From: Diadema antillarum
Lineage: Eukaryota
Direction of reading: 5' to 3'
NCBI RefSeq assembly: GCF_040938485.1
Contig: NW_027270954.1
Coordinates: forward strand, 1,178,001 to 1,242,000
Length of the DNA: 64,000 nt
The notes under the pieces were generated by a model. The model saw only the letters and a list, made by a program, of their open reading frames with translations, was not told where the DNA came from and ran no database searches. A program made the translations under genes and the position numbers. Shown here piece after piece: positions 2,764 to 63,539 of this stretch (positions within the stretch are counted from its first letter, which is position 1; each line of letters starts with the position of its first letter).

Positions 2764-2895
2764 TTTTCCGTCTTGACTGAACCTCCTGCCTCGGCGAGCA
2801 TACAGCTCGTTAGCCATGATCAATAAGAGACGAAGGTTCTTTACCTATGAGGCTTCTTCCGCAGTCCCTCCATCCTCGGATCTGTTTGAATCTGG

Positions 2896-2990: not shown

Positions 2991-2999
2991 AGGTCCCTC

Positions 3000-3241: not shown

Positions 3242-3696
3242 GTCTGCAGGTAATACAGGTACTATTAAAGTATGTAAAGCAAGTCGCTTCAGAGCCAGAA
3301 GTGATGAAACTCTCAGAGCAAAGTCGTTGGGTACTTTGACTACTTCGTAATATCTGTTGCTTATATAATTCCCTCTAACCATTATTGAATATTCTGTTAC
3401 TATCTCCAAACCAGGGCTATATACCTGTGAGTTCTAGGTCCTTCCACACACCCTAGCTCATTGTCTAGTTATGTGTATGGCATCATCCCTAAAATAACGA
3501 GCTACAGAAAACGGGCCTACACACTACAATTAAGTATGTTCTGTATAGTGTATGCATTGACTCACAGTGTGTATTAATACACACACATGACACACTAAGG
3601 AATTCTTAATACACAATTACATACACGGGTGAAGGGAACGATCTGTATTGTGTGAGCTCTATTCTTTCACATGCATGCACTGGTAGCTTTACAAAT

Positions 3697-4858: not shown

Positions 4859-4977
4859 GTTATTGATCCCCTTACCGGAGAAATTCGGCGAAGGACTCCA
4901 CGCGGTCTCGTACATTGCCCAGGACTCTGCTCCTGTGCCGAATCGAGCCATCTGTGTCTTGGTGTTTGAAGTAGAAA
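4859..4977 (+). CDS. Exon 1: 3' half of HYR domain
   Basis: [26 protein letters not shown]; phase 2 to 1. Confidence 0.8.
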
Positions 4978-7900
4978 GTTAGTAGGCCTACATTTTCATC
5001 CACTTCTGTTTCATAATGAGCCTTACATTTGCATTCTCCCCTTGAAAGTCATAGGATTAAGTGGAGTCGGTTGTGGTCATTTCTATATTCCTCTACTGAT
5101 TCACACGTTAATTAATTTTTCGCAAACAGTGACACATTTTTTACCATTGCAAATTATTACAGTATCAACATCATTCTATTTCTTGTGTGTGAGAGCAAAG
5201 AGACGACCAATAGACAAAATGAAATTTAACGGGACAAAGGATTTCTGATACGTTGAACGAACGAGTCCGACACTAGGCAAAAAGAAAGGCCCACGAGATC
5301 AACACAGTGTACATTAAGCCCGTGATGTAATCAGTGTCGGACTCATGGTACTTGTTTGGCTGGTAACACGCTCATGAGCCTTTTTTGCCTATCTGCCTAT
5401 AGTGTCGGACACATGGGCTTATTTGCTTAGTGTCGAACTCGTGGGCTGTATGACTCATGGGCTGTGTGTCTCGTGGGCTGCATGTCTGGTAGACTGTATG
5501 ACTCGTGGCCTGTGTGTCTCCTGGGTATTGAGCTGTGACGTGCAGTCCTTCGAACCTACCTCGTGGTGATCATGTGTGTGAAGAAATTACAATTTCAAGC
5601 ACTAAACAGCGAGACGTAAAACGCAGGCGACGTTACAATCGCATGTTTTGTTTGGAGATGGACAGAGAGCACTACATAGTCCATGGGCCAGGCCAGATAT
5701 TGGTACCATCTGAGGTGGCAAAACCTTTTTGGTGTCATTTTGTTTGTCGGGCATAGATATGCTTATCAAGCTATGATAGCATTTCCAAATGAGTAGCTTA
5801 GTCATAATAAATGAATTTTTAACCAATTTGGTCTCGTTGTTATATCCCTATACTTCTGAATCGAAACTAACCGCTGTACAAAGAAGAGCACTGTCTTCTG
5901 TATGTTCCATAGAGCTGTAAAATGCAGCTCTGTGGTATGTCCACAGGTGTTCTGTTGTAAACGCGGTGCGCTTAGTCTTTATTCAAGGCAGCGAAGGGAA
6001 TATCCAAAGGTTATGATGTCCACAGCGCTTAGTGTTTATTCTAGACAGCGAAGGGAATATCCAAAGCGTATGGTACAGTGTATATCCTTTTATCTAAAAA
6101 CAACAACAACAAAAAAAGCAATTCATCATGAATTTTACTGTATTTTTCAATTATTTATCATTTTCCGGCGAAAAACGCTCCGGTGAAAACGCTAATACCA
6201 CGCCAATGTCGCTTTATTCCATCCAAAAATATAACATAATGCAAAAACAATGTACCGGTAGACTACGATACATTATAATGAATAATATTATAAATGAACA
6301 GAGTGATTTTTGTTTAAAAATTAATGTATTCGTTGATAGGGTTGTATAAAAACAGTATAGATAATCCCTTTTATGAAGAACTTTAGATATAATAACGGTA
6401 CATTGGTCTAGATAAAGGCTAAGCGCACCGCGTGACAGCTGTGGACCTCATAACCCTTTGGATATTACCTTCGCTGCCTTGAATAAAGACTAAGCGCACC
6501 GCGTTTACAACAGAACACCTGTGGACATACGGAAGACAGTGCTCTTCTTTGTATAGCGGTTAGTTTCGATTCAAAAGTATAGGGATATAAAAATGAGACC
6601 AAATTGGTTAAAAATTCATTTATTATGACTAAGCTACTCATTTGGAAATGCTATCATAGCTTGATAAGCATATCTATGCCCGACAAACAAACTGACACCA
6701 AAAAGGTTGTGCCACCTCAGGTGGTACCAACAACCCATTTTTCGGGTCTTGGCCCATGGACTAACATGTTGGATGGCGCGGTCTCCACATCCTCAGTATT
6801 TTGTCAGGAGGCCCAAACTGTTCCTGACCCGCTGCTTTTATCTCGTTTGGTTTATATAGAATAAATCTCCACTGATTGTCTATTGTAATTTCAAAAGGCA
6901 CGTTAATACACATTTCGGAAAAGTGTCATCATTTAGTGCGAACAAATGAGTTGAACTTTACTTTACAAAACGTGATCGAACGGTGTTCACTGCACAGGTC
7001 TTCTTCTTTTCCTTTTTTTTCATATTCTTTCTCTGCCTTTCTGCCATTTTCTTTTGCTACATCTCTTATTTTGTGTTTGCCTTTGCATGCCTACACTATC
7101 CGTGGCCATGTTTTGCATGTTAATCGTTACAGTTCTGAAATGTCCTGCTCGTCCACACCCACCAAATGGCTACCATGATTGTTCCTCTACATACGACGCT
7201 ACGGTAGACACTGTTTGCCATTACAGCTGTAGACAGGGTTTCATCCTAGAGGGCTTGAGAGATCAAGTGTGCGCTGAATTTGGGACGTCCAACACTGTTG
7301 ACTGGGTCTCCAATCCCCCGACATGCCAAGGTATTGCTGATCGCTGTTGATAGGAACGGGTATCGCGAGATGATGGTTTTCATCCAGTATTTTTAGTTAT
7401 TCTTCATTTTGTCTGAATGTTATTTTCATGAATACTGATATTAGTGATAATAACGGAAATGATAATGATGATCATTATAATGATAATATCAATAATGATG
7501 TTGATGATATACAATGATAATGATAATAATGATAATGATGATGAATGAATGATAAGAAGATAATAATATCACTATAAGTTTGATGAATTTTTCGTTCTTC
7601 CCCAGAAATATCGTGCCCTTCTCTTGCGGCGCCATTGAATGGTCATTTGACATGCACGAATTCAAATGGCTATAACAGCATCTGTTCCACTCTGTGCAAT
7701 GACGGCTACTCGCTCCCGCCGACTGCTTCCAGAGATCGGGTGTGTCTGGCGAACGGATGGACAGGTGACAGTGTGCCTAAATGTGCAGGTGAGGATTCAC
7801 TGGATTGTTTGTTGTCGTAGTTTCTTGTTTGGAGAAGCACTGACGAAAAGCAATTAGGCAAACAAATTATATCATAACATGACCCCAACAAAAACATTCA

Positions 7901-8199
7901 ACTCACCTATTGCACTCACACAGCACTCATTCACATCTTCATTTCCCTCTAAAGCATACTATTGTAATTTAGAAACGTTTGTGCTGCTTCTTTGTCATTT
8001 GGTTATGTTTGGCTTAAATTTGTCACATTGATGTTATTCATTTTTTATTTGATTTGATTTGAGAAGCAAAATAAATACGAACGAACAAACGAGCACTGGC
8101 CTGGTCTCTTTAGGATGGTCATTATTGAATAAGTTAAATAATTTTCAAGCTTATAACATAGCAGGCCCCACTTTTAACACAAGTATATAGGCCCTATGC

Positions 8200-8260
<61 letters not shown>

Positions 8261-11200
8261 GACCTAGTTCCACTTTTGTGGTGTTTGAGTTGGGCGGTCA
8301 CATTTAAAGCGAGCTAAACGATGCACTCTGTATAGATGTAATGGCAACTATCAGAAATCCCTCAAATGAAAATGACTTCTGAAAAGAACGCGAAAGAAAA
8401 CATAGTTTTCTCTACTTCTTCTTTTTCCTAGTTACAGTTGGCAGAATATCCACTTCCTTCTGCTTTGCTTCCTTCATTTGGGACTTGAAAATGCTGATAT
8501 TTACCTTTTCCTCCATCAAATGAAGAGAGGTTTGGTTGTGGGGGATGCATGGGGACCTCGCCTCCCTTATTGGTCTTTTTGCGTTTCATTGACATAATGC
8601 TGCATTGATCTATTTTTTCAACTTTCAAAATCATTTCGTTCATGGAACGTGTTGAATCGACTCTTTCATGTCTTGATCACAAAATGTCCGCATCGGCTCC
8701 GGACACTTGCATATTCCGCATCGGCTCCTCGCTGTCCTAAAACATTCCTGGTGTCTTCCGCTTTCATTCACGAAGCTTCCCCACACCGCGGGATTCTTTC
8801 AGGAGCGTTTGCGGAAGGAGCGGAAGGGTTCCGGACAGGCGGGATGTCCTCAGGACATCGTCAGGACAAGTTTCCGAATGTGTCAGGAAGTTTATTTCCG
8901 CGTCCAAATTTAAGTCCCCAGTCACATGATGCTCTGCGTCAGGCGTTACGTCCATACAAGTCTTTTTTTTTCTGTGGATTCCCTCGGATCCTTTGCCGTC
9001 ACTAGAAAATTTTTACAAAACATACGGGAAAAAATGCGGGCGATACGGACAGATACGACCAAATGAGAATACTTGCGTCCACTTGCGGATATTCTTACGA
9101 ATCGGCACGTAATTTCTTCTTTCAACTTGCGTAAACTTCCGAATTGTTCTGAACACTTGCGGAGAGTTGCGAATATTTACAGAGAGTTGCGGATATTTTC
9201 GGAATATAACGGATAGTTACAGATTGTTATAAATGATTATGGACAATATGGTTTTCTCTGACGATCCCTGCCAAGTCAGTGTATTACGACAGCAAGTTTA
9301 TCACATATTGGACTGTCTTATATTGTACATTGGGGAAAACTGAAATTGAATTACGTACAAGTTGTGAAAATTTTTCCTATTCCTTTACTTTGCTTTACAG
9401 TAATAAAAAATGAAATTTTGAACCTGAAGTTTCAATTTTATTTGTGCAACTCAAAGATGAATAAACATCGTAAATGTAAAGAATACATTAACAGAATTAT
9501 ACCACATATAAAATACAACATAAATCGATGTTAAACATTAGAAAAAGAAAATTTTACTTACAGTCATGGAATAGACAAACTGTGGTTACGTTGTCATTGT
9601 GCACTGATATTCATGACTTGCTGGGTTATGTTAAGGAGATTGTTATGATAAAGCAATGCTTATTACATTTCCAGAAAAAGACTTTGGGACTTTCGAACAC
9701 TCCTCCCACACCCAAATACAATATAAAAAAGTAATACACATTCCATGGAGCGTAAAGTGGGTAAGACTATAGAGAAATATTAAATTTGTTCTCATTCTGT
9801 ATAGTTTATCGCTGTCCAACACCTTCCCTGGCTAGAAAAGGGAATAAAATGCAGTCATCCCATCCCCGACAAAAAAGAAAAAAAAATATTGCCTTTTCCG
9901 AAAAATATACGTTCAAAGAGTGCAAGAAAAAAAAATGTTCAGCACCACGGGTCAACCGATGTCATGGGTATATGGGTGCCACCTAAAATGACCATTTGTG
10001 GGAGAGGTTTCATAACTTGACCATGCGGTTCTGCCTCTCCAGTAGTGCGGAATACCAAATTTGCTTTCCGGGTCTTGTCCGCGTCTTGTCCGCGCCCTAA
10101 TGGACGCCTGGTCTTAGCGGTTTTAAGGGAAATAATATGAATGCAGCCTGAACACTAATCAATGTCAGTTAATAGTTTTCTTTTCCCAGTCGCATGAGAT
10201 TGCAAATTTAAGCAAATACTGTTCTGGAATTTTAATTTAAGCCTGCTGCCATCCCATACCCCACTTTCTTTTGTCCTCATCGACAGACACAACCGGGCCA
10301 TCGTTTAACAACTGTCCCGGAAGCGAACCCCCCATTTACGCGCCGCCAGGACAGACCCGAGCTGTTGTTGACTGGATAGTGCCCTCAGCGACTGACAATT
10401 CAGTGGCGACAGTTGATGTCAACCGAGTCAAAGGTCCGCCACCAGGAACGGAGCTCGATCCGGGCATCTATACGATTCGATACAGGGCCAAAGACGGAGA
10501 GGAGAACGTTGCCGAGTGTGCCTTTACTAGGATTGTTCAGCGTAGGTCAACCTCTTGCTTTGAAACGGTTACGGTAACAGTAATAGAAACGTTGATTATG
10601 AGAATGCCTAAGGCAAAATGATAGAAACCATAATAAACCGTTAACGATAATGCTACTAATCACTGCTTACAATCATACATTAGCCACAACAACGGTACTA
10701 ATGTGATATTTTCCAATGAGATAATAATGATAACTACTTATAATCATAAATCACAGATACAGTCATAGCAATGATGACAACAGTCGCATTTCAAATAGTA
10801 TCATATTCATAGCAACGATTATGAGATACTTCATATTTTGATGATTACAAATTACGCACTTGTTTACTCTATAGAGGAGCATAATCGTAATCAGCAGTTG
10901 CTACGCTATTACAACTGGCAAATAAAAACAATAAAGAGTAATACTGGTTTTGAAATAACTTGACTTCAGACAAAAATACTAACGATCTACGAAACATTTC
11001 GTCAGCTATTTCGTCAGTTATGAAATGTTAAAGGTTCGCTATTTTTTGATAAACAGTTCTCGAACAAATCGGAATATTCGTATGCAAATGAGTGAGCCGA
11101 TAATGTCATCATCACCTCACAACTTTCCATTGATCATGTACAAAAAACTGACGAATCTTCAATTTTCTACCATTAAAGTTTAAAGCATTGTGTTATTCCT

Positions 11201-12588
11201 AGCTGAATAAGGTCAAAATAATGGTCAGTCAGGCACAAGTTTTGAAACTGTGGTTTAACCAAACAAACAAATAAAACACTGGAAATTTCAAGGTTTTCAG
11301 TACAAACTGCATTGAAAGTCTTGAGGTGGTGACACCATCAACTCCGTTGCTTTTGTTGTTGTTGTTGTTGTTGTTGGATTTTTTTTTTTTACCAAACTGT
11401 GTTTGGAACATAACGTTAAGATTAAGAGTTTTATGTGTAGGTTAATTGTTTTGTAATATATTCGTATATTTAAGATAGGGCCTCATCCACATCAAGCTCT
11501 GCTTCTGATATTGGTCCTCTGTAAAGATTTCTCCTTTGGTCATATATATAAATACAGTTATGCCTTAACATGTTGCTTTGATTCACATGTTTTTACAGAC
11601 TGACGTAGTTACGAAATAGACATTTCTTATATTGATTTGTATGTTGTACTGTCCTTTTTTTCCATACTCTGTATCACTTTGTTTTTATTTGGTATTGTAA
11701 TTGGAGAAAAAAAATCCAGAAATAAACCAAACCAAACCAAACCAAACCAAACCAATTCACTCATTTAAAAGTCATAATTGTATTGACCGTCTAATGTTAA
11801 AACTGTTTTGTGAAAATTAGCAAAACTTGCAACTTTCCTAATTTTTATCTGTGTTTGATCAAATTTTCACTCCGGTGCTTTTAAATTATTGCTCTTTCTT
11901 TTCAGACTAGCTTTTAAATGGTGAGAAAATAACTGTCCTTTAAAAACACTTCTCTGCACACTGTAAATATAACTTGTCTCGCCGTGTTTCTTCTTTATGT
12001 GGCTATTACCAAGCAGTAATCCAGTGCAGTCCATTACCGATTCGACCTGGACTAGAAACATACTGTAGCGCCAGTACTTACCGCGGCTCACAGTGCACAT
12101 TCTCCTGCAGTACTGGCTTCAGACTTGAGGGTCACAACTCGACCACATGCGAGAAGCGAAACATACGAGGGGAGTGGACACACCAACCTCCCCAGTGCCT
12201 TGGTAAGTCAGACTCGAACAACAAAACTGCCTAAATGGGGTTTTGAAAAAATATGCCCTGCATAAGCATAACTGACGTGTATGATGCGTACGGAATTGTA
12301 TTTTTTTTTTGCTTTCTTTGTTATTATTAATCACCATCATCACTTGCATTTTAGTATGAAATTCTCCAAAAAGGCTTTGTAAAGTATTATTCAAGGTTGT
12401 TGGTGATTAAATTATGGTACAGATAATATTCATTATTCTATTCATTTATTCATTTTTTCATTTATTCATTTATTCATTACTTTATTCATTTATTCATCCA
12501 TTTCTTTTTAATCTCATTTCCATACAACATGTATGTACATTACTAATGTCAAAATTGTAGCAAACACTATTCTAAGTAACATATAGTA

Positions 12589-12621
<33 letters not shown>

Positions 12622-57300: not shown

Positions 57301-59076
57301 TCGCATCATTCGCCATGTGTATTGTCTTGAGATAAGGAATGGCTTGTTTCATCTCCGGAAGCAAGGCATTGCAGGTGTTTTCTTATAGTTTCATTGAAAC
57401 CTGTCAGTATTTTAAGCTTATAATTATGTTCTAACGAATGCGGTGGATAGCATAAATTATCGTCATCACAGATTTATTATGACTGAAGGATTCCCTATAC
57501 GGGAAAAACCTGCACGAAATGTGCGCGGGGTGGGGGGATTGGGATTTGCGTCCCAATGCCGACTACTGCAGCTCTTGTCGCTCCTACATAAATTCCACAA
57601 CAACGTAACTTTTAGCAGGGAACTACAGTGTTGCATTTAAATGTCACTTCGGTCTGTCGGAGTATGACCGCATAATAACCGAAGCATAACCGAACTAGGA
57701 ACGAAGTATAACCGAAGTGTCATGGATGACCCGTGTCGCAACCTCGCAACAGTTCAAGAACTCTCCTTGATTTTAGTTCCTCTGAAGTGGGATATTTCCA
57801 TATTCAACAAGTGCTGTACCTCAAGTTTACTTTGTGTTGTGTTTGAAACTCGTGCAGAGATCGAGTCTCCGAACTCTCTGGAAGCATCGGTTGTTTTCAC
57901 CTACCCCGACACCTCGTGTACCTCGGATGCCGCCAGGGACGAACTGCAACAGACTTTCACATCCACTCTCCGCAATGTGTCGCACCTTCTCAGTTGTGAC
58001 CTTAACTTGGACTGTGACATTGAAGATATAGAGGTAAATAAAAAAAGAGCACTCTCCATATTCTAATGGATTGGTAAATAAAGTAAGTTATTCATTTTAG
58101 ATTAATGCCTCATTTTAATGTTTGTTTAATCCTATAACCAGGCCTGGCTTTTTTGTCTGTTCTGTGGCCGGGGGAGGGTTGATTCAACCCCCCCCCCCCC
58201 CCGAGATCTCGGCCGTCGATCGCGAAATCGCCCTGAAATTTGGCACATACAGTACATTACTTGTCGCGTAATCTACCAAACTATAAAAGAAAAAATATGA
58301 TTTTTTTTTAATCGTTTATATTTCATATTAACTAATATGCGTTAAATCATAAATTTTGCTCTAATTAAGAAATTAAATCTAATGGCATCCTAAGTTTTTG
58401 GTGACATTATTCCTTGTAGCATTCCTAACAGTGTACTTGAAAAAAAATCTGGTATCAAAGTTAGTTTCTTATGTATTCTATTGTTTTATGAATTTGTTAT
58501 GTATTTCATTGTTTTTGGACCTTTTGTTATTGTTTTTTTCGTTTCTTGTTCACAAAACTTATTACAGAACCTATTTTAAGCATAATTATGCTAAAATTAA
58601 TTGATTTCAGCCATTGAAAGTGAAAATAATAATATCTTTATGAATAAGGTGAGAAAACTCTATTTGCATAGACTTTGTACACAAAATCACGTTTTTGAGC
58701 CATTTTCGGTCTGACAAGCATGAATAATAGGTCGTGCAGCGTCGTAACGTTATGTCCAATTTTCGCGAAGTAAGATGAAGACAAGATGTGCGAGACTTGA
58801 GACTCAGCGAGCGGCGCAGTCAAAAAAATTTCGCGCGGCAGAATAGTCGCAGAAAACGTCGAGGGGGGGGGGGGTTGATTCAACCCCCGGCCCTTTAAGG
58901 GTTAAGGTGTCAAGCGAACTGATTATCGATGCAAATATCACTATAAGAGTATAATATATGTATTTACATAATCATATGATACATTATATATGTATGTATA
59001 TAATATATAATCATATGTGATACAAAAATATGTGTAAATGTATATTTGCGTATTAAAGCCAACATGACAATACTCC

Positions 59077-59118
<42 letters not shown>

Positions 59119-59338
59119 ACCTCATCTCCCTCTTTCCCTCACACACACTCATTAGATAAGCAACTGTGCCAATCGCAGAAAACGAGCAGTGGTAGATGAA
59201 CCCGTCAGGATTTCTGTCGTCGCCAAGAAGAATTTCTCGTCAACATCCGGGGAATCTGGTATGGGTTAAAAGCATCTCCGAAATAAGAGAAGTTTGTGGG
59301 CAGACTTTAAAAAAAAACTTTGTACTTTGTTTTTCCCC

Positions 59339-59370
<32 letters not shown>

Positions 59371-62300
59371 GTGTTGCGGGGGGAGGGGGGGTATTAAGCA
59401 TTGCATGCTGGGTTTTTTTTCTCTGATTCACCCAGACGAAGCAATCAAAATACACCGTAGTCACAGTATTGTTCGTTAAAAAAAAGCAAACTATCAAAAT
59501 AAGATATATCAAAATATTGCTCAAATTCAGGAAATTATGTTACAGAATCAAACTCCAATTACTAGAAGTGCTTTTATACTTGGTTCTACAGAAAACCTGA
59601 AGTGTTACAACGTGCTTTATTTGTTTGCAAAATACTTAAAATCATATTTTCTATCCGAAATAAAAAGAAATCATTACGTTTCAGCCAATTTTGTCCAGTT
59701 TTAAGCAAGTGAAGAAAGTAGACAAATATGTCTGAGAAAACTAAAGGTTTTGTATTTTAAAATTAATCGGAATCGTATTCATATTATTTAGATGTTCCGT
59801 AGCTGCCTGTCAAATTTGTATTATTTGTCTTTATCGTCTTTATCATATGTGACATTTATTTTGTACATGAATGTTTCAGTAAACAAAATTTCAAGGTAAA
59901 ACAAAACAGATATCATGTCAATAATTTGAGAAGAATGGTGTTGAATCGTCTTGCACTGCGATGTAATTTCCGTCAACAGGTGCGCAGACATACGACAAAA
60001 TGCGCTCAAGTCTGCTCACGCTCATGGCTAACGGATCGTTAACATTGACAATCAATGGGCGACAGCATGCCCTTGATCCAGACGCCGTCACGGGACAAGT
60101 CAAGCTCGTCTGCCCCGAGGGCTTCGGCGAGACTGCTACTGGTGGCTGCTGTAAATATCTCGCTGAAACTGCATTGTATAGACATCCTTGGCAACGTGTT
60201 CTGATTTTGGGCCTACGCAGACTTTTTTTGACAATTTCATCGCAAAACCTATGTCGAAGTTTTTAATTAAGTTGTCTCCCAGATAGTTGCACTCTGATCG
60301 TAAAGACTGTAAGGTCTGCAACAAAGTTTGTCTCATTTCTTACACAGTATCGATTATACAAATCCAATGTAAGCACATTAAACAGTGCAAGGAGTGACAC
60401 AAATCGAAGATATTCTCATACGGCGTAGACATTTCCCTAGGTATGAGATAAGCGTTACATTGATTATTTCAGTTTAGTCTGCACACCCACTCTCAGTAAG
60501 AAAGCCACTTTTCCTACACATTCATAGCTCTGCCTTGAGGAATTCATGATCTATTAAATTGTTGAAAGGAGATAAATTTCATACATAATGTCAAAATACT
60601 CCCATACCTATATTATGATTCTTTGTGTTCTACTTTATTATTACCACTTTCCTAGTATTGATTGTTATCATTGCTATCCTTGCTGCCTCATACCAGTTGA
60701 ACCTGAATTAATCCTTTGTGTAATATAACAAAATAACCATACTAAAATCCTGAAAAAAGCAAAATTTGTCTTCAGGAATGTATTTTTTATCTATCGCAAG
60801 TGTGCCCATTCCCTCCTCTCCCCCAAATAGTGTGCAAATGTTGTGTATTATAATCAACATCCTCTCTTTCTCTCTCAGCACTGTGCCCCATTGGAACGTT
60901 TCAGTATGTGCTGAATGAGACGCGGAGCTACTGTGTTCCTTGCCTACCAAACTCTTATCAGGATGAAGAGGGACGGACGGAATGTTCTCCCTGCCCAGAC
61001 GGCATGATTACCATCGATTTCTCGTCCACAAAGTCATCCGATTGTATTAGTACGAATATTTCATAACTATTCAATACATGCTACCTCTCACTTTGTCTTT
61101 AAAAGTATCTTAAGATAATACCTTATGCATCGAAGATTGGTAACAAACTGTATATTAACAGAAGCAGATGACAAATTGTATAATCACGACAGTAATGATG
61201 AAAATGACAGTTACGATTATCTGACAGGAAGAATAATTCGAAAAAGGACAAGCATAATAAAAAGAAGAAGAAAATTTGACCGATGATATTTTGACATAAA
61301 TTCAAATACATTTTTTTTTCTAAAAAGAAAGAACTACGCTAAGTATACAATATCAGTACTATAATTGAGGTCGTCCTCATTTTTTTTCTTGATTTTCTTT
61401 TTCATTTTCCCTGTTGTATTCACCAAAAAGTGGCTTGCCCTGAGGGAATGTATCATGATATAAAGAATCCGACGGTAGAGGACGCTGCACCTTGCCGACC
61501 CTGTCCCAGGAACACGTACCAGAACGAGACGGGGCAAGCGCGTTGCACCGGTTGTCCTGAGGGTTACGTCACTCTTCAATCTGGTTCGGAAGACGTCACT
61601 GACTGTGTTGGTGAGACAAGTCACTTTACTTTTTGTGTTTTACTGATCTGACCATTTCATTTGTCAGAGGGTTTTTTTTGGGGGGGGGGAGGTTTGGTTT
61701 TTTGACTCCAGACTAAATGCAGAGATAGGTATACACCGAATCGACTTATATCTTTTAAATTCAAGATAACAAAAAGTTGACTACCGCCTGCGAATTTCCA
61801 ACAGCGGCTAACGTTTCTAGTCATCAACCCTTAGGGAATATACGAGTCAAATATTCAGTGGTTTTCGTATTCTTTAAATTTACTGCAATTGAAAGTATTT
61901 CGATCAATTAGTTTAAAAAATTTCTGGTCTTTCATCTTCCAGTTTAAAATGTCGGATTTTTTTTTATTTTTAATGTTTTGGTTTTCCTGAGCGTAAGAGA
62001 GATCCAGAGTGCACAACAGCATGTTAACATAAAGATATTAACAGAATCAATGAAAAGATAGGTAGTACATAAATATTGACACTTTGGATCAGTGTAACAG
62101 CTTTATAATTGCATATTACAGTACAGTATAGTTACTTTAAGATCTTAAGCGAAATATTATTCAGACTGTGCGCTCTATACAACCTCTCAACAAGTTTTAT
62201 TCTTTACTTTCTCGAAAAATAATTTCTGGGGACTTTTTTTGCCGTGATCGTGGTAGTACTATAATTTATCTCGGTTTGTTGTTCTTTTCATGATTTCGAG

Positions 62301-63539
62301 ATATTTACATATAAACACCAGGAGTTCAATGTCTTTCATTTAGTTAGCGGTATCTACATATTTTGGTATTGTGTTTTGTATGAAAAAGTGAAATTGAAGT
62401 TTTGATTCAAACCAAATCTAGGTCAGTTCCACTGTGTTGTCAGTTTTGAAGTGACCTACATTAAACTCAAAGAGGGTTGCGTTCAGAACCGATCGTAGGA
62501 CAGGTGAATACTGAGGACAGCAAAAAATACTTCCACGATTTAACAAATAAATTGTATATCAATAATGCCTTAACCCTAACCAGGCCGGGCTTTTTTGGGT
62601 GTTCTGTGGCCGGGGAGGGGTTGATTCAACCCCCCCCCCCCCCCCCCCGAGATCTCGGCCGTCGATCGCGCAATCGCCATGAAATTTGGCACGTGCATTA
62701 CCTGTGGCGTAATCTACCAAGCTATACATAAAAAAATGGAAATTTTTGTCATTCTAATTAATTATGCTAATATATGCATAAAATCATACATTTTGCTCTA
62801 AATCAGAAATTAAAGCTCCTAGAATCCTAATTTTTGGTGAAAACATTCTTTGTAGCATTCCTAACGATGTACTTGAAAAAAAAAATGGTATCAAAATCAA
62901 TTTCTTATGTATTGTTTTATGAATTTCTTATGTATTTCTTTGTTTTTTCGACCTTTTGTTTTATCATTTTTTTCTCGCAAAATTTATAACAGAACCTATT
63001 TCAAGCATAATTATGCTAAAATTAATTAGTTTCAGCCTATGAAAGTGAAAATAATCATATCTTTATGAATAAGAAGAGAAAACTCCATTTGCATAGACTT
63101 TATACACAAAATCACGTTTTTGAGCAATTTTCGGTCTAACAGGCATGTATAAAACGTTATGCAGCGTCGTAACGGTATGCGCGATTGTCGCGAAAATGGT
63201 GTCAGAAGATGCGCGAGACTTGAAAGTAGAAAGTCGGCGAGCGGCGCGGTCAAAAAATTTCGCGCGGCGGAGTAGTCGCGAAATTACCACTACGATTTAA
63301 CAAATGAATTGTATATCATGAATGATATGGTGCTTTAATGTGCTTTCTGTGCAAAAATTTAGTTGCATGCAGTCAAGGAATGTACCTACACCCCACGGAT
63401 TCACCCCGCCCATCCTGCCAGGCGTGTCCGCTCCACACCTACCAGGACAGACTGCTTCACCAAGAGGAAGAGTGTATTGCTTGTCCGCCCGGTCACATTA
63501 CCCTGACTGAAGGCTCACAGAATTCCACGGACTGTCAGA
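4859..63539 (+). CDS. Giant SVEP1/Uninflatable-related CCP-HYR-GCC-EGF-pentraxin/LamG-TSP1 protein, partial gene (52 exons)
   Basis: 52 exons with AG/GT boundaries and matching phases at every visible junction; recognisable Cys spacing in each domain; no start codon/signal peptide or stop/TM segment in the window. Confidence 0.93.
5706..6724. mobile_element. Non-autonomous DNA transposon with ~300-bp terminal inverted repeats
   Basis: About 5700-6030 is the reverse complement of about 6430-6730; TA on both flanks within ttggTA/TAccaa. Confidence 0.75.
7133..7330 (+). CDS. Exon 2: CCP/Sushi
   Basis: [16 protein letters not shown]; phase 1-1. Confidence 0.92.
7606..7788 (+). CDS. Exon 3: CCP/Sushi
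   Basis: [17 protein letters not shown]; phase 1-1. Confidence 0.92.
8206..8258. repeat. (TA)n microsatellite
   Basis: Direct reading. Confidence 0.95.
8680..9240. repeat. TCCG/CGGA-motif-rich element, probable MITE remnant
   Basis: Dense ttccg and gcgga motifs; no matching TIR pair found. Confidence 0.4.
10287..10541 (+). CDS. Exon 4: HYR
   Basis: [27 protein letters not shown]; phase 1-1. Confidence 0.9.
11400..11755 (+). mobile_element. LINE 3' end fragment with (AAACC)n tail
   Basis: T-rich 3' UTR-like stretch, a gggcctc..gtcctc hairpin-like motif, AAATAAA and (AAACC)n near 11725-11753. Confidence 0.45.
12017..12202 (+). CDS. Exon 5: CCP/Sushi
   Basis: [22 protein letters not shown]; phase 1-1. 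Confidence 0.92.
12963..13781. mobile_element. TGT...ACA element with ~17-bp inverted termini (solo LTR or Ginger-like)
   Basis: TGTGAGGATGTCTCGC versus GCGAGACATCCTTTACA; purine-skewed internal repeats; TSD degenerate. Confidence 0.45.
14719..15306. mobile_element. Harbinger-type MITE, copy 1 (nested)
   Basis: TIR AGCCGGGTTCACACGTAC; ATT TSD; internal TTAGCGGGAT motif arrays. Confidence 0.85.
15448..16074. mobile_element. Harbinger-type MITE, copy 2 (nested)
   Basis: Near-identical to copy 1; imperfect TSD AGT/ATG. Confidence 0.85.
15707..15734. mobile_element. 28-bp perfect palindrome with 8-bp TSD (hAT-like micro-element)
   Basis: CAGTGCCGTATATT|AATATACGGCACTG flanked by ACAACAGC on both sides; copy 1 has a single ACAACAGC. 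Confidence 0.7.
16298..16501 (+). CDS. Exon 6: CCP/Sushi
   Basis: [20 protein letters not shown]; phase 1-1. Confidence 0.9.
16504..17291. mobile_element. Degenerate foldback/MITE element
   Basis: Termini GATAA..GTTTTCCCATTCATTTTC / GAAAATGGATGGGAAAAC..TTATC; TTCA-rich left arm, TGAA-rich right arm, central (CA)n. Confidence 0.55.
17486..17734. mobile_element. MITE with TA TSD
   Basis: ~35-bp TIR TGAAGAGTTTGTTCGCAAAAAC(C/T)GATAAGTCCAT. Confidence 0.8.
18194..18391 (+). CDS. Exon 7: CCP/Sushi
   Basis: [20 protein letters not shown]; phase 1-1. Confidence 0.92.
18423..18800. mobile_element. Kolobok-like MITE fragment (right end uncertain)
   Basis: TTAA followed by AGG terminus; related sequence near 26150-26400. 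Confidence 0.4.
19098..19298 (+). CDS. Exon 8: CCP/Sushi
   Basis: [32 protein letters not shown]; phase 1-1; not captured whole in the ORF track. Confidence 0.9.
19326..20043. mobile_element. PIF/Harbinger-type MITE
   Basis: TIR AGCC(AG/TC)GGTTACACC..AGCCGAAT; TTA TSD at 19323-19325 and 20044-20046; CCGAAT/ATTCGG arrays. Confidence 0.85.
20667..20873 (+). CDS. Exon 9: CCP/Sushi
   Basis: [23 protein letters not shown]; phase 1-1. Confidence 0.92.
21791..21877. repeat. 44-bp tandem duplication
   Basis: aaactctgctgcacagtaatg..atcgatc.tattccat occurs twice. Confidence 0.85.
21938..22041 (+). CDS. Exon 10: HYR 5' half
   Basis: [15 protein letters not shown]; phase 1 to 0. Confidence 0.85.
22506..22674 (+). 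CDS. Exon 11: HYR 3' half
   Basis: [27 protein letters not shown]; phase 0 to 1. Confidence 0.88.
22900..23300 (-). mobile_element. RTE-clade LINE 3' ORF2 fragment
   Basis: [24 protein letters not shown] and DRTKWR motifs spread across shifted frames. Confidence 0.8.
23373..23503. other. Assembly gap (131 N)
   Basis: Direct reading. Confidence 1.
23504..23721 (+). CDS. Exon 12: CCP/Sushi, 5' end inside N gap
   Basis: [25 protein letters not shown]; donor at 23722. Confidence 0.88.
24455..24643 (+). CDS. Exon 13: CCP/Sushi
   Basis: [31 protein letters not shown]; phase 1-1. Confidence 0.88.
25139..25336 (+). CDS. Exon 14: CCP/Sushi
   Basis: [22 protein letters not shown]; phase 1-1. Confidence 0.92.
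25947..26082 (+). CDS. Exon 15: HYR 5' half
   Basis: [20 protein letters not shown]; phase 1 to 2; absent from the ORF track in this frame. Confidence 0.88.
27089..27204 (+). CDS. Exon 16: HYR 3' half
   Basis: [28 protein letters not shown]; phase 2 to 1. Confidence 0.88.
27616..27807 (+). CDS. Exon 17: CCP/Sushi
   Basis: [25 protein letters not shown]; phase 1-1. Confidence 0.92.
28012..28390. mobile_element. Kolobok-type MITE
   Basis: TTAA TSD on both sides; TIR AGGGATGGTACAGTATTGGT / ACCAAAACTATACGATCCCT. Confidence 0.8.
29010..29201 (+). CDS. Exon 18: CCP/Sushi
   Basis: [23 protein letters not shown]; phase 1-1. Confidence 0.92.
30159..30362 (+). CDS. Exon 19: CCP/Sushi
   Basis: [22 protein letters not shown]; phase 1-1. 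Confidence 0.9.
31343..31582 (+). CDS. Exon 20: HYR
   Basis: [34 protein letters not shown]; phase 1-1. Confidence 0.92.
32422..32610 (+). CDS. Exon 21: CCP/Sushi
   Basis: [22 protein letters not shown]; phase 1-1. Confidence 0.92.
33250..33459 (+). CDS. Exon 22: CCP/Sushi
   Basis: [22 protein letters not shown]; phase 1-1. Confidence 0.9.
33586..33916. mobile_element. Empty copy of the AGGGAGCTTTAG host MITE
   Basis: Same TIRs and internal sequence as 14668-16212 without the nested inserts. Confidence 0.85.
34126..35530 (-). mobile_element. 5'-truncated L2/CR1-group LINE
   Basis: [23 protein letters not shown] and HSYSTRSA motifs; gggccc/taccctgggtaa 3' motif and (AAAT)n tail. Confidence 0.9.
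35724..35972 (+). CDS. Exon 23: HYR
   Basis: [30 protein letters not shown]; phase 1-1. Confidence 0.92.
36377..36640. mobile_element. MITE with ~45-bp TIR and TA TSD
   Basis: TGTGACCCG..GGATCCT.AAGTCGCTGACGGG with its inverse; TA on both flanks. Confidence 0.75.
37100..37345 (+). CDS. Exon 24: HYR
   Basis: [33 protein letters not shown]; phase 1-1. Confidence 0.9.
38165..38362 (+). CDS. Exon 25: CCP/Sushi preceding linker 1
   Basis: [25 protein letters not shown]; phase 1-1. Confidence 0.92.
39028..39340 (+). CDS. Exon 26: linker 1a with polybasic sites
   Basis: [34 protein letters not shown]; phase 1 to 2. Confidence 0.88.
39678..39922 (+). CDS. Exon 27: linker 1b
   Basis: [16 protein letters not shown]; phase 2 to 1. 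Confidence 0.88.
41134..41295 (+). CDS. Exon 28: GCC2/GCC3 (ephrin-receptor-like) repeat
   Basis: [23 protein letters not shown]; phase 1-1. Confidence 0.93.
41699..41860 (+). CDS. Exon 29: GCC2/GCC3 repeat
   Basis: [25 protein letters not shown]; phase 1-1. Confidence 0.93.
42105..42266 (+). CDS. Exon 30: GCC2/GCC3 repeat
   Basis: [20 protein letters not shown]; phase 1-1. Confidence 0.93.
42509..42718 (+). CDS. Exon 31: EGF-like x2
   Basis: [21 protein letters not shown]; phase 1-1. Confidence 0.93.
43272..43967 (+). CDS. Exon 32: EGF-like x6
   Basis: Six 6-Cys EGF units, several with Ca-binding DIDEC/DINEC starts; phase 1-1. Confidence 0.95.
44474..44704 (+). CDS. Exon 33: EGF-like x2
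   Basis: [22 protein letters not shown]; phase 1-1. Confidence 0.92.
45085..45238 (+). CDS. Exon 34: EGF-like
   Basis: [23 protein letters not shown]; phase 1 to 2; absent from the ORF track. Confidence 0.9.
45631..45786 (+). CDS. Exon 35: EGF-like
   Basis: PCTHGDC..CEAGYTG..QIDFC..TY; phase 2-2. Confidence 0.9.
46125..46407 (+). CDS. Exon 36: EGF-like
   Basis: [26 protein letters not shown]; phase 2 to 0. Confidence 0.92.
46452..46902. mobile_element. CACTA/EnSpm-like MITE
   Basis: TACTGTAAAAA / TTTTTACTGTG (each one mismatch from CACTGTAAAAA); CA 2-bp TSD; AACACC/GGTGTT subterminal repeats. Confidence 0.7.
47129..47330 (+). mobile_element. Degenerate tRNA-derived SINE
   Basis: A-box-like tagtatagtg head, then a core ccctcttgaccc..gtataaatgg..gctggggtaat. 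Confidence 0.5.
47755..48045 (+). CDS. Exon 37: EGF-like
   Basis: IDTDDC..CQNGG..DIDDC..VCEDQ; phase 0-0. Confidence 0.92.
48622..48766 (+). CDS. Exon 38: EGF-like
   Basis: [22 protein letters not shown]; phase 0 to 1. Confidence 0.92.
49882..50002 (+). CDS. Exon 39: EGF-like
   Basis: [22 protein letters not shown]; phase 1 to 2. Confidence 0.9.
50245..50880 (-). mobile_element. Highly decayed LINE 3' end
   Basis: (TTGAA)n tail on the minus strand, as at 55255; coding motifs barely legible. Confidence 0.3.
51490..51623 (+). CDS. Exon 40: EGF-like
   Basis: [25 protein letters not shown]; phase 2 to 1; absent from the ORF track. Confidence 0.9.
52004..52217 (+). CDS. Exon 41: pentraxin/LamG-like domain, part 1
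   Basis: [14 protein letters not shown]; phase 1 to 2. Confidence 0.82.
52566..52765 (+). CDS. Exon 42: pentraxin/LamG-like domain, part 2
   Basis: [25 protein letters not shown]; phase 2 to 1. Confidence 0.85.
53618..53791 (+). CDS. Exon 43: pentraxin/LamG-like domain, part 3
   Basis: [20 protein letters not shown]; phase 1-1; absent from the ORF track. Confidence 0.85.
54351..54584 (+). CDS. Exon 44: EGF-like x2
   Basis: [23 protein letters not shown]; phase 1-1. Confidence 0.93.
   Translation: MSMTACLRPALMEGPVLTNSMPTSASARGVLTVRSARLTLIFAMTILVKMAGRVPQSMARSSVLVLKTTSVPSVKSP
54972..55142 (+). CDS. Exon 45: thrombospondin type-1 repeat
   Basis: [29 protein letters not shown]; phase 1-1. Confidence 0.95.
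55255..56045 (-). mobile_element. L2/CR1-group LINE 3' fragment
   Basis: [26 protein letters not shown] and [11 protein letters not shown]; (TTGAA)-type tail. Confidence 0.85.
56731..56937 (+). CDS. Exon 46: CCP/Sushi preceding linker 2
   Basis: [29 protein letters not shown]; phase 1-1; absent from the ORF track in this frame. Confidence 0.9.
56948..57035. repeat. (AGT)n microsatellite
   Basis: Direct reading; intronic, just after the exon 46 donor. Confidence 0.9.
57858..58033 (+). CDS. Exon 47: linker 2a
   Basis: [22 protein letters not shown]; phase 1 to 0. Confidence 0.82.
58130..58901. mobile_element. piggyBac-like MITE, complete
   Basis: TTAA TSD at 58126-58129 and 58902-58905; (T)CCT...AGGG ends; GGGTTGATTCAACCC near both ends. 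Confidence 0.82.
59156..59258 (+). CDS. Exon 48: linker 2b with RRKR site
   Basis: [22 protein letters not shown]; the phase 0 to 1 exon needed to join exons 47 and 49. Confidence 0.8.
59980..60150 (+). CDS. Exon 49: linker 2c
   Basis: [27 protein letters not shown]; phase 1-1. Confidence 0.82.
60879..61049 (+). CDS. Exon 50: GCC2/GCC3 repeat
   Basis: [23 protein letters not shown]; phase 1-1; absent from the ORF track. Confidence 0.9.
61431..61610 (+). CDS. Exon 51: GCC2/GCC3 repeat
   Basis: [22 protein letters not shown]; phase 1-1. Confidence 0.92.
62574..63283. mobile_element. piggyBac-like MITE, second copy lacking its right end
   Basis: TTAA then CCCT start; colinear with 58130-58860; the right terminal segment is absent. 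Confidence 0.82.
63363..63539 (+). CDS. Exon 52: GCC2/GCC3 repeat (gene continues downstream)
   Basis: [25 protein letters not shown]; phase 1-1. Confidence 0.9.

What the first reader, a model, noticed from the sequence alone, without database searches (positions are those of the whole stretch)
4859..63539. Giant (over 3,480 aa) SVEP1/Uninflatable-related protein with an unusual domain order
Seen: the 52 exons splice into one frame giving (CCP/HYR array)-linker-GCC x3-EGF x21-PTX/LamG-EGF x2-TSP1-CCP-linker-GCC x3, open at both ends. Established: SVEP1 has the core HYR-HYR-CCP-linker-GCC x3-EGF-pentraxin but only about 6 EGF before the pentraxin and its long CCP array after it. Drosophila Uninflatable shares the GCC-EGF-LamG core. 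Inference: this is a distinct family member, with a long CCP/HYR array before the core, a Notch-scale EGF run and a TSP1. It could be a giant apical-matrix, adhesion or immune-recognition protein.
Basis: partly seen in the sequence, partly recalled or inferred. Interest (0 to 1): 0.8.

Follow-up and report, generated by a model that had tools for sequence, protein, structure and literature searches.

The report
Sea-urchin Uninflatable-like giant membrane protein
The window holds 52 exons of a real 3,744-residue sea-urchin cell-surface protein that public annotation already predicts; its domain order is shared from sea stars to amphioxus and resembles the fly protein Uninflatable, so it is genuine but not a new kind of gene.

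Summary
Observation confirmed almost to the base. Fifty-two plus-strand exons (4859-63539) splice into one frame. All visible splice sites are AG/GT. The 674 + 2,806 residues are identical to residues 132-805 and 811-3616 of a RefSeq model of Diadema antillarum (P0005, 3,744 aa, "uncharacterized protein"). The N gap hides only the acceptor and about five codons of one CCP exon.

The model adds a signal peptide upstream, and a transmembrane helix and short tail downstream. The second CCP-linker-GCCx3 module therefore sits next to the membrane and is not a second gene.

The "unusual" order is not unusual. The same architecture, including 21 EGFs, recurs in urchins, sea stars, a hemichordate and amphioxus. 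Insect Uninflatable also has two such modules and a transmembrane helix; vertebrate SVEP1 has one module and no helix.

- Both "linkers" fold as SEA-like domains with furin-type motifs in the beta2-beta3 loop.
- The PTX/LamG domain is homologous to the SVEP1 pentraxin domain.

No RNA run was listed. An earlier first-reader note (s1-208809, unchecked) reports a membrane receptor with SVEP1/Uninflatable modules about 308 kb before this window on the same genome.

Verdict: an uncharacterised member of the known SVEP1/Uninflatable superfamily. Interest is modest.

The parts
4859..4977 (+). exon 1 in window: second half of an HYR domain (P0005 aa 131-171); its first half lies upstream of the window
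7133..7330 (+). CCP exon
   Evidence: Pfam Sushi
7606..7788 (+). CCP exon
10287..10541 (+). HYR exon
   Evidence: Pfam HYR 6.6e-10
12017..12202 (+). CCP exon (acceptor corrected from 12014)
16298..16501 (+). CCP exon
18194..18391 (+). CCP exon
19098..19298 (+). CCP exon
20667..20873 (+). CCP exon
21938..22041 (+). HYR first half
22506..22674 (+). HYR second half, ends in phase 1
23373..23503 (.). N run (131): hides the acceptor and about 5 codons of the next CCP exon; not filled
23504..23721 (+). visible part of a CCP exon cut at its 5' end by the gap
   Evidence: one stop-free frame only
24455..24643 (+). CCP exon
25139..25336 (+). CCP exon
25947..26082 (+). HYR first half
27089..27204 (+). 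HYR second half
27616..27807 (+). CCP exon
29010..29201 (+). CCP exon
30159..30362 (+). CCP exon
31343..31582 (+). HYR exon
32422..32610 (+). CCP exon
33250..33459 (+). CCP exon (acceptor corrected from 33247)
35724..35972 (+). HYR exon
37100..37345 (+). HYR exon
38165..38362 (+). divergent CCP that opens module 1
   Evidence: CCP cysteine pattern; no Pfam hit; CCP fold in model
39028..39340 (+). module 1 SEA-like domain, first half (beta-alpha-beta) plus basic loop
39228..39326 (+). three furin-type R-x-K/R-R motifs in the disordered beta2-beta3 loop (P0005 aa 1803, 1818, 1832)
39678..39922 (+). module 1 SEA-like domain, second half
41134..41295 (+). GCC / Ephrin_rec_like exon
   Evidence: 3.5e-14
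41699..41860 (+). GCC / Ephrin_rec_like exon
   Evidence: 5.6e-13
42105..42266 (+). GCC / Ephrin_rec_like exon
   Evidence: 6.1e-14
42509..42718 (+). EGF 1-2
43272..43967 (+). EGF 3-8 (largest exon)
44474..44704 (+). EGF 9-10
45085..45238 (+). EGF exon
45631..45786 (+). EGF exon
46125..46407 (+). EGF exon
47755..48045 (+). EGF exon
48622..48766 (+). EGF exon
49882..50002 (+). EGF exon
51490..51623 (+). EGF exon (ends EGF 21)
52004..52217 (+). pentraxin/LamG-type domain, exon 1 of 3
52566..52765 (+). pentraxin/LamG-type domain, exon 2 of 3
53618..53791 (+). pentraxin/LamG-type domain, exon 3 of 3
54351..54584 (+). EGF 22-23
54972..55142 (+). TSP1 exon
   Evidence: Pfam TSP_1 1.6e-9
56731..56937 (+). 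divergent CCP that opens module 2
57858..58033 (+). module 2 SEA-like domain, first half
59156..59258 (+). mini-exon: end of beta2, beta2-beta3 loop and start of beta3 of the module 2 SEA-like domain
59174..59185 (+). furin-type RRKR motif (P0005 aa 3356-3359)
59980..60150 (+). module 2 SEA-like domain, second half (acceptor corrected from 59988)
60879..61049 (+). GCC / Ephrin_rec_like exon
   Evidence: 3.5e-13
61431..61610 (+). GCC / Ephrin_rec_like exon
   Evidence: 1.9e-13
63363..63539 (+). GCC / Ephrin_rec_like exon, last in window; the model continues downstream with a TM helix and tail (aa 3618-3744)
   Evidence: 6.9e-10

Best explanation
The window carries residues 131-3617 of one gene of the sea urchin Diadema antillarum. 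The gene encodes a 3,744-residue type I membrane glycoprotein. From N to C it has: a signal peptide; a fixed array of HYR and CCP domains; module 1 (divergent CCP, SEA-like domain, three ephrin-receptor-like GCC domains); 21 Notch-type EGF domains; one pentraxin/LamG-type lectin-fold domain; two EGFs; a TSP1 repeat; module 2 (CCP, SEA-like domain, three GCC domains); a transmembrane helix; and a tail of about 100 residues. It belongs to a family with this same architecture in echinoderms, hemichordates and amphioxus. That family is the deuterostome counterpart in layout, and possibly the orthologue, of insect Uninflatable, and a paralogue of secreted SVEP1/Polydom. Shown here: the exon structure, domain composition, conservation of the architecture, purifying selection, the predicted SEA-like fold of both linkers, and positionally conserved furin-type motifs in their beta2-beta3 loops. 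Inferred: proprotein convertases cut both loops in the secretory pathway, as reported for the SVEP1 linker. The halves of each SEA-like domain would then stay together non-covalently, as in the Notch heterodimerisation domain or mucin SEA domains. The giant ectodomain would thus be held on a short membrane stub and could be shed. At the cell surface the CCP/HYR array and the O-fucose/O-glucose-type EGF run would mediate adhesion or modulate Notch-type signalling, as Uninflatable does.
For: - Identity with the RefSeq model: the spliced exons are exact substrings of P0005. P0005 is named 'uncharacterized protein [Diadema antillarum]'.
- Signal peptide and TM plus tail are visible in P0005 outside the window.
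- Pfam on exons.
- Same architecture in 14 or more relatives from urchins, sea stars, Glandiceps and amphioxus, with 21 EGFs in most. Insect, nematode and mollusc Uninflatable-type proteins also have two CCP-GCC modules plus a TM. SVEP1 has one module and no TM.
- The CCP-linker-GCC block aligns over 97-100% of its length with mosquito Uninflatable-type proteins (E 4e-44, 2e-38) and with vertebrate SVEP1 (about 1e-25).
- In the module tree the window gene sits in an urchin clade with Lytechinus and S. purpuratus LOC754362 (SH-aLRT 97). All second modules form one side of a branch, support 75.
- The PTX/LamG domain is linked by an iterated profile to the SVEP1 pentraxin and the Uninflatable LamG domain. 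Pfam Pentaxin is significant in the amphioxus, hemichordate and sea-star relatives.
- dN/dS is 0.30 over 1,556 codons against D. setosum.
- AlphaFold models of both modules reach pLDDT 87 and 91. Their best structural matches are SEA domains: MUC16, TMPRSS6, ADGRG6, Z 8.4-9.6.
- Furin-type motifs occur in the linker of module 1 in all 15 deuterostome members, in about half of second modules, and in SVEP1. Density is 14.5 per 1,000 residues in the loops against 0.40 elsewhere.
- A furin site in human SVEP1 just before R997 is mentioned in bioRxiv 10.1101/2025.03.17.643633.
- 15 of 23 EGFs carry the O-fucose consensus and 7 the O-glucose consensus.
- Uninflatable is a transmembrane protein that antagonises Notch (PMC3340373).
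Against: - No transcript evidence could be obtained; no RNA run was listed.
- The RefSeq models are computational and may have been built partly from each other, so their agreement is not fully independent.
- An AU test does not reject independent duplication of the module in protostomes (p 0.33). One-to-one orthology with Uninflatable is therefore not shown.
- This protein lacks the CUB, C-type lectin, FA58C and LDLa domains of Uninflatable and has a TSP1 where Uninflatable has an HYR.
- Insect Uninflatable linkers carry no furin-type motif.
- Pfam SEA does not match any of the 47 modules, so the SEA assignment rests on predicted structure alone.
- Cleavage, membrane location and any link to Notch are untested.
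- The Gly-rich hydrophobic stretch after the signal peptide of P0005 may be a modelling error at the 5' end.
Confidence: 0.8

Rival explanations
1. It is simply one of many lineage-specific SVEP1-like mosaic genes of ambulacrarians. The likeness to Uninflatable (second module, TM helix) arose by independent duplication and domain shuffling, so there is no orthology and no shared function.
For: The AU test cannot reject a tree in which protostome modules 1 and 2 are sisters (p 0.33). Support for one clade of all second modules is only 75. The accessory domains differ: TSP1 here against CUB, C-type lectin, FA58C and LDLa in Uninflatable. All domain exons are phase 1-1 cassettes that shuffle easily.
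Against: The order HYRx2-CCP-SEA-like-GCCx3-EGF run-PTX/LamG-...-CCP-SEA-like-GCCxn-TM is shared by deuterostome and protostome proteins. The free tree groups second modules across phyla. Module 2 of mosquito Uninflatable-type proteins aligns over the full length with this family.
Confidence: 0.3
2. The 52 exons belong to two genes. One would end after the TSP1 exon. A second would start at the CCP at 56731 and carry the linker, the GCC domains and the TM helix. The RefSeq model would then be a read-through fusion.
For: Reading through the donor at 55142 meets a stop after five codons, and AATAAA signals follow from 55320. The model for a second D. antillarum copy (P0003) ends in the mini-exon equivalent. 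A D. setosum model (P0008) does look like a fusion of two tandem genes.
Against: No ATG-led hydrophobic first exon with a phase-1 donor lies between 55143 and 56730. P0003 itself joins TSP1 to the CCP and the linker. In every relative, module 2 follows EGFx2 (with or without a detected TSP1) and precedes the TM in one model. A stop soon after a donor is what any intron shows.
Confidence: 0.05
3. The locus is a decaying or unexpressed copy, a pseudogene in a cluster of paralogues.
For: Paralogues and a second near-identical copy exist. Transposon fragments fill several introns. No RNA run was listed.
Against: There are 3,480 codons without a stop or frameshift across 52 exons, with canonical splice sites throughout. 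dN/dS is 0.30 against D. setosum. The cysteine framework of the CCP exons is kept, all 23 EGF units fit the six-cysteine pattern, and all six GCC exons match Pfam.
Confidence: 0.03

Closest known systems
Uninflatable (Uif) of Drosophila and other insects; mosquito Uninflatable-type proteins P0152 and P0159 were compared here
   Same: Single-pass membrane protein of about 3,500 residues with a short tail. It has an N-terminal CCP/HYR region, then HYRx2-CCP-linker-GCCx3, a long EGF run, a LamG/pentraxin-type domain, a second CCP-linker-GCC module and the TM. The module aligns over its full length.
   Different: Uninflatable carries CUB, C-type lectin, FA58C and LDLa domains (PMC3340373). It has about 14 EGFs detected here instead of 21, an HYR instead of TSP1 before module 2, four GCC domains plus an EGF before the TM, and no furin-type motif in its linkers. 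Orthology is not proven.
SVEP1 / Polydom of vertebrates
   Same: It shares the core HYRx2-CCP-linker-GCCx3-EGF-pentraxin. The linker and the pentraxin-type domain are homologous. The linker has a furin-type site.
   Different: SVEP1 has an N-terminal VWA domain, only about 6 EGFs before the pentraxin, a tail of about 28-30 CCPs, no second module, no TSP1 and no TM; it is secreted (PMC12549020).
RefSeq 'SVEP1-like' or 'uncharacterized' models of echinoderms, Glandiceps and amphioxus (for example S. purpuratus LOC754362, Lytechinus P0128, Asterias P0047, amphioxus P0141)
   Same: Same architecture almost domain for domain, including the CCP/HYR pattern, 21 EGFs, PTX-EGFx2, module 2 and the TM. 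The window gene clusters with P0127, P0128 and P0008.
   Different: Only 29-44% identical. GCC number in module 2 varies from 1 to 4. Pfam recognises Pentaxin in the non-urchin members only.
Cnidarian polydom and polydom-like proteins (Nematostella, Hydractinia)
   Same: Diversified family built round a Sushi-HYR-ephrin-receptor-like core, some members with added TSR domains (PMC12549020).
   Different: Those are described as secreted matrix proteins with PAN/Apple, FA58C or CUB domains. They were not compared at sequence level here.
SEA domains with a cleaved beta2-beta3 loop (mucin SEA domains; the furin-cut SEA of ADGRG6/GPR126; the Notch heterodimerisation domain)
   Same: Predicted beta-alpha-beta-beta-alpha-beta sandwich with the cleavable loop between strands 2 and 3. 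Best structural matches: 1ivz Z 9.6, 9nrc Z 9.5, 6v55 Z 8.5.
   Different: No sequence match to Pfam SEA. Cleavage would be by a convertase, not autoproteolysis. That the ADGRG6 SEA and the Notch domain are furin-cut is from my own knowledge and was not checked here.

Membership tests
SVEP1/Polydom (vertebrate type) | N-terminal von Willebrand factor A domain | tested here: not met
   The precomputed Pfam list of P0005 has no PF00092, whereas the SVEP1 hits have it.
SVEP1/Polydom (vertebrate type) | Core HYRx2-CCP-linker-three ephrin-receptor-like domains-EGF | tested here: met
   Full-length alignment of the block to SVEP1, 27-28% identity, E about 1e-25.
SVEP1/Polydom (vertebrate type) | Pentraxin domain after the EGF run | tested here: inconclusive
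   The spliced domain reaches only Laminin_G_3 (27.3 bits against a cut-off of 27.6) and no Pentaxin hit. An iterated profile joins it to the SVEP1 pentraxin, and the amphioxus, hemichordate and sea-star relatives score as Pentaxin.
SVEP1/Polydom (vertebrate type) | Long C-terminal CCP array; secreted, no membrane anchor | tested here: not met
   After the pentraxin-type domain come EGFx2-TSP1-CCP-linker-GCCx3 and a TM helix.
Uninflatable type | Single-pass type I membrane protein with a short cytoplasmic tail | tested here: met
   P0005 aa 3618-3744 hold a hydrophobic helix of about 25 residues and a tail of about 100. This part lies outside the window.
Uninflatable type | Two CCP-linker-GCC modules flanking the EGF run and LamG/pentraxin-type domain, the second next to the membrane | tested here: met
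   architecture strings; module coordinates in P0152, P0159, nematode and molluscs.
Uninflatable type | CUB, C-type lectin, FA58C (and LDLa) domains | tested here: not met
   These are absent from the Pfam list of P0005 and present in P0152 and P0159. Uninflatable domain list from PMC3340373.
Uninflatable type | Orthology: second modules of protostomes and deuterostomes form one clade | tested here: inconclusive
   The free tree has them on one side of a branch, SH-aLRT 75. The AU test does not reject the alternative, p 0.33.
Uninflatable type | Binds or antagonises Notch; apical localisation | not testable with these tools
   The only relevant observation is the Notch-type O-fucose (15 of 23) and O-glucose (7 of 23) consensus sites in the EGFs.
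Ambulacrarian/cephalochordate 'SVEP1-like' transmembrane family (database models) | Architecture HYR-CCP2-HYR-CCP5-HYR-CCP3-HYR-CCP3-HYR-CCP2-HYR2-CCP-linker-GCC3-EGF21-PTX-EGF2-(TSP1)-CCP-linker-GCCn-TM | tested here: met
Ambulacrarian/cephalochordate 'SVEP1-like' transmembrane family (database models) | Falls inside the family's clade for both modules | tested here: met
   Module 1 lies in a 17-row clade (97) and module 2 in a 15-row clade (98).
SEA-like domain (fold level) | beta-alpha-beta-beta-alpha-beta sandwich with a cleavable beta2-beta3 loop | tested here: met
   Predicted only: models with pLDDT 87 and 91; SEA domains are the top hits at Z 8.4-9.6; the motifs lie in the loop.
SEA-like domain (fold level) | Sequence match to Pfam SEA (PF01390) | tested here: not met
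   None of the 47 modules matches, and the linkers alone have no Pfam hit.
SEA-like domain (fold level) | Actual proteolytic cleavage with non-covalent association of the halves | not testable with these tools
   Needs protein work.

The most novel reading that the evidence does not exclude
This family would be the true deuterostome orthologue of Drosophila Uninflatable. That implies an ancient bilaterian apical membrane protein with two convertase-cut SEA-like modules and a Notch-type EGF run. It would be retained in echinoderms, hemichordates and amphioxus and lost in vertebrates, where only the secreted paralogue SVEP1 remains. Uninflatable's Notch-modulating and apical-matrix roles could then be studied in sea-urchin embryos. 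The 'linker' of SVEP1, which carries a glaucoma-associated variant near its furin site, would be a cleaved SEA-like domain.
Probability: 0.35. Interest if true: 0.55.

Novelty: new member of a known kind. Interest (0 to 1): 0.3.

Why it matters
As a gene, it is an ordinary and already predicted member of the SVEP1/Uninflatable superfamily. The value lies in the comparison.

- It shows that the papers I searched treat Uninflatable as an insect protein and SVEP1 only as its "potential orthologue". Yet invertebrate deuterostomes keep a membrane-bound protein much closer to Uninflatable in layout.
- It shows that the unannotated "linker" shared by SVEP1, Uninflatable and this family is predicted to be a SEA-like domain with a conserved convertase site.
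- That gives a testable processing model for all three proteins.
- It also offers an experimentally tractable animal, the sea-urchin embryo, in which to ask what the family does.

Tried and rejected
- RNA evidence: the look-up of sequencing runs on 51400-61399 listed no RNA run, so read laying was not used and the junctions remain unverified by transcripts.
- The one representative-library search, made with linker exon 39574-39966, returned only two short proteins. It was still useful, because a cluster look-up then led to the long Diadema models.
- The two linkers do not align with each other by BLASTP. Their kinship appeared only through profiles and predicted structure.
- My splice finder invented exons at 1160, 2865, 5403, 5913 and 60283. 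It also missed or truncated several real ones. These were removed or repaired by hand and by comparison with P0005.
- Pfam on the separate PTX exons gave almost nothing. PDB sequence searches gave only weak neuronal-pentraxin and laminin/neurexin hints.
- I first read P0003 as an isoform with an alternative 3' end. It lies on a different contig and is about 93% identical, so it is a second copy or haplotig. Its start codon is in the wrong frame of a CCP exon.
- I looked for a signal-peptide exon between the TSP1 exon and the second CCP and found none.
- The AU test for an ancient against an independent duplication of the module was inconclusive.
- Literature searches for a described deuterostome Uninflatable, or for a SEA assignment of the SVEP1 linker, found nothing.
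Full report
**What is in the window.** The window is 64 kb at about 39% G+C, with a single run of 131 N at 23373-23503. Cysteine-rich stop-free segments on the + strand showed CCP, HYR, GCC, EGF and TSP1-like translations from about 4.8 kb to 63.5 kb. I built a gene model with a codon-usage and splice-site dynamic programme. I then curated it by hand.

The final model has 52 exons between 4859 and 63539. Every visible junction is AG/GT, phases are consistent and there are no stops. Most domain exons are phase 1-1 cassettes.

**Domain evidence.**
- Pfam finds Sushi in 14 of 17 CCP exons.
- HYR is found in 6 of 9 HYR pieces.
- Ephrin_rec_like, the former GCC2_GCC3, is found in all six GCC exons at 7e-10 to 4e-14.
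- TSP_1 scores 1.6e-9.
- The cysteine pattern gives 21 EGFs before and 2 after the lectin-fold domain.
- 15 of the 23 EGFs carry the C2-x4-S/T-C3 O-fucose consensus and 7 the O-glucose consensus, as in Notch-type EGFs.

**The gap.** The exon before the gap ends at 22674 in phase 1, and 22675-23372 looks intronic. Directly after the N run the sequence is already inside a CCP exon. That exon is stop-free in one frame only and ends at 23721 in phase 1. The acceptor and about five codons are therefore hidden, as counted from the coordinates of the protein model (positions 806-810). I did not look up or fill any letters. Continuity cannot be proven from the window. It is supported by the cassette phases and by the RefSeq model. 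An extra exon inside a gap of unknown true length cannot be excluded from the window alone.

**Whose gene it is.** A search of the representative library with linker exon 39574-39966 found only two short proteins. One is a 377-residue Diadema setosum RefSeq fragment, misleadingly named SCUBE1. Its 90% cluster also holds a 2,761-residue D. antillarum protein, P0003. Searching with part of P0003 found P0005, a 3,744-residue "uncharacterized protein" of D. antillarum.

After I moved four splice sites by 2-8 nt, my spliced exons are exact substrings of P0005: aa 132-805 and 811-3616. The window therefore comes from D. antillarum (Echinoidea, Diadematoida), and the gene is already modelled. Earlier notes of this scan call the genome a sea urchin, which agrees.

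P0005 adds what the window lacks. Upstream is a signal peptide and the first half of the first HYR. Downstream of 63539 is a hydrophobic helix of about 25 residues and a tail of about 100. The protein is thus a type I membrane protein, and the second CCP-linker-GCCx3 module is its membrane-proximal part.

**One gene or two.**
- No RNA run was listed, so there is no transcript proof.
- No ATG-led hydrophobic exon with a phase-1 donor lies between the TSP1 exon and the CCP at 56731.
- Both D. antillarum models join these exons.
- In every relative the second module follows EGFx2 (with or without a detected TSP1) and precedes the TM helix.
- P0003 lies on another contig and is about 93% identical. 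It is a second copy or haplotig, not an isoform. Its model starts in the wrong frame of a CCP exon and stops by reading through the donor of the mini-exon.

I give the two-gene reading about 5%.

**Is the gene alive.** The orthologous D. setosum locus (L001) is 87-98% identical in DNA. Over 1,556 aligned codons dS is 0.097 and dN 0.029, so dN/dS is 0.30. That indicates purifying selection.

**Is the architecture unusual.** It is not. I built HMMs from this protein's own domains and scanned the relatives returned. The string HYR-CCP2-HYR-CCP5-HYR-CCP3-HYR-CCP3-HYR-CCP2-HYR2-CCP-linker-GCC3-EGF21-PTX-EGF2-(TSP1)-CCP-linker-GCCn-TM recurs, in whole or with a shorter N-terminal array, in:
- Diadema paralogues;
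- three Lytechinus proteins;
- two S. purpuratus proteins;
- Patiria, Asterias and Acanthaster;
- the hemichordate Glandiceps;
- an amphioxus protein.

NCBI names many of these "SVEP1-like". The precomputed Pfam lists show TSP_1 in most of them.

Mosquito Uninflatable-type proteins, a nematode protein and mollusc proteins read ...HYR2-CCP-GCC3-EGF14-[LamG]-HYR-CCP-GCC4-EGF-TM. They too have two modules and a membrane anchor. Vertebrate SVEP1 reads GCC-CCP3-HYR2-CCP-GCC3-EGF6-[PTX]-CCP2-EGF-CCP27-30-EGF2, without a second module or a TM.

The CCP-linker-GCC3 block of this protein aligns over 97-100% of its length with the insect proteins (E 4e-44 and 2e-38) and with SVEP1 (about 1e-25).

**Phylogeny of the modules.** A tree of 26 first and 21 second modules puts the window gene with a D. 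setosum paralogue, Lytechinus P0128 and S. purpuratus LOC754362 for both modules (SH-aLRT 97). All second modules lie on one side of a branch, with support of only 75. An AU test does not reject independent duplication in protostomes (p 0.33). The shared layout with Uninflatable is clear. Strict orthology is not proven.

**The PTX/LamG domain.**
- The three separate exons give only weak Laminin_G hits.
- They also give a weak neuronal-pentraxin alignment.
- The spliced domain scores Laminin_G_3 at 27.3 bits, just under the cut-off, and shows no Pentaxin hit.
- An iterated profile links it to the SVEP1 pentraxin domain and to the LamG domain of Uninflatable-type proteins.
- The corresponding domains of amphioxus (2e-23), Glandiceps (6e-14) and Asterias (2e-12) score as Pfam Pentaxin.

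It is therefore the family's pentraxin-type domain, diverged in sea urchins.

**The linkers.** Neither linker has a Pfam family. AlphaFold models of CCP-linker-GCC1, built with an alignment of 47 modules, are confident: pLDDT 87.4 and 91.3. Each linker folds as beta-alpha-beta, loop, beta-alpha-beta.

An all-against-representatives structural search puts SEA domains first for both:
- MUC16 SEA: Z 9.6 and 9.3;
- TMPRSS6 SEA: Z 8.6 and 9.5;
- a transmembrane-protease SEA: Z 8.7;
- the zebrafish ADGRG6 ectodomain over its residues 375-525: Z 8.5.

These values are only a little above the tool's stated background of 7-8. However, they cover the whole domain and are reproduced by both modules.

The loop between strands 2 and 3 carries furin-type R-x-K/R-R motifs. 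There are three in module 1 (from 39228) and one, RRKR, in the mini-exon of module 2 (59174-59185). Such a motif occurs in the module 1 linker, at or near the same position, in all 15 deuterostome family members, in about half of second modules, and in SVEP1, but not in the insect proteins. Motif density is 14.5 per 1,000 residues in the loops against 0.40 elsewhere. A furin cleavage site in the human SVEP1 linker is mentioned in bioRxiv 10.1101/2025.03.17.643633.

My inference, untested, is that both SEA-like domains are cut in the secretory pathway and hold together non-covalently. Mucin SEA domains and the Notch heterodimerisation domain behave this way, as far as I know. The ectodomain would then be tethered to a short stub and could be shed.

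**Literature.**
- PMC12549020 describes a diversified Polydom family in Nematostella with a Sushi-HYR-ephrin-receptor-like core and occasional TSR domains.
- bioRxiv 10.1101/2020.06.15.151027 calls Uninflatable a potential SVEP1 orthologue. Its reason is the three ephrin-receptor-like domains, EGF repeats and LamG.
- PMC3340373 lists the domains of Uninflatable and shows that it antagonises Notch.
- PMC13178913 calls it a conserved insect protein.
- I found no paper on the deuterostome membrane-bound family or on a SEA-like fold of the linker. The searched library is incomplete.

**Verdict.** The gene is an uncharacterised, already predicted member of a conserved family within the SVEP1/Uninflatable superfamily. 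The modest interest lies in its Uninflatable-like membrane topology and in the predicted cleaved SEA-like modules.

Noticed in passing
window 1-2760, + strand: A DIRS-type retroelement lies in the intron upstream of the first exon in the window. A 576-codon open frame holds reverse transcriptase (RVT_1, 3e-12) and an RNase H-like part. It is followed by a tyrosine recombinase split over three frames (Phage_int_SAM_4, Phage_integrase).
   Followed up: partly
window 55269-56047, - strand: Open frames inside the intron between the TSP1 exon and the second CCP look like the tail of a non-LTR retrotransposon protein. Pfam gave no hit for 55769-56047.
   Followed up: partly
window about 14700-16200: Duplicated, nested repeat copies show near-identical translated segments at about 14.7-15.1 kb and 15.4-15.9 kb. 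They fill the 4.1-kb intron between 12202 and 16298. An earlier first-reader note (s1-225760) places a small TIR insert at 15699-15742.
   Followed up: no
P0003 (XP_071496311.1), maps to window 7651-59266: A second D. antillarum copy on another contig is about 93% identical at protein level. Its model starts at an ATG in the wrong frame of the CCP exon at 7606-7788, skips several exons, and ends by reading through the donor of the mini-exon. It is probably a haplotig with a poor model.
   Followed up: partly
L001 (D. setosum OZ188205.1), gene at 10001-19550: The D. setosum orthologue is annotated only as a 377-residue fragment named 'signal peptide, CUB and EGF-like domain-containing protein 1'. 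The name is misleading, and the surrounding locus holds the other exons without a model.
   Followed up: partly
P0008 (D. setosum, same chromosome as L001): Its domain string continues after the TM helix with EGFx2-TSP1-linker-GCCx4. The model therefore seems to fuse two tandem paralogues, which points to a local cluster. An unchecked note of this scan (s1-208809) reports a membrane receptor with SVEP1/Uninflatable modules 308 kb before this window.
   Followed up: no
model m447ced947975 (window 38165-41295 spliced): The best Foldseek PDB match of the CCP-SEA-like-GCC unit is thyroglobulin: bovine 7n4y E 5e-13 and human 6scj E 9e-8, over about 340-355 columns with TM-score 0.47-0.51 on the query. 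Thyroglobulin may hold a related module before its type 2 (GCC) repeats.
   Followed up: no
P0005 aa 36-70 (upstream of the window): A Gly/Val-rich hydrophobic 'glycine-zipper'-like stretch follows directly after the predicted signal peptide. It is either a modelling error at the 5' end or an odd N-terminal feature.
   Followed up: no
window 16860-17010, 36030-36140, 45960-46030, 51340-51400, 59330-59370: (CA/TG)n microsatellites in several introns, and a trinucleotide repeat giving a poly-Ser translation at about 56950-57090.
   Followed up: no
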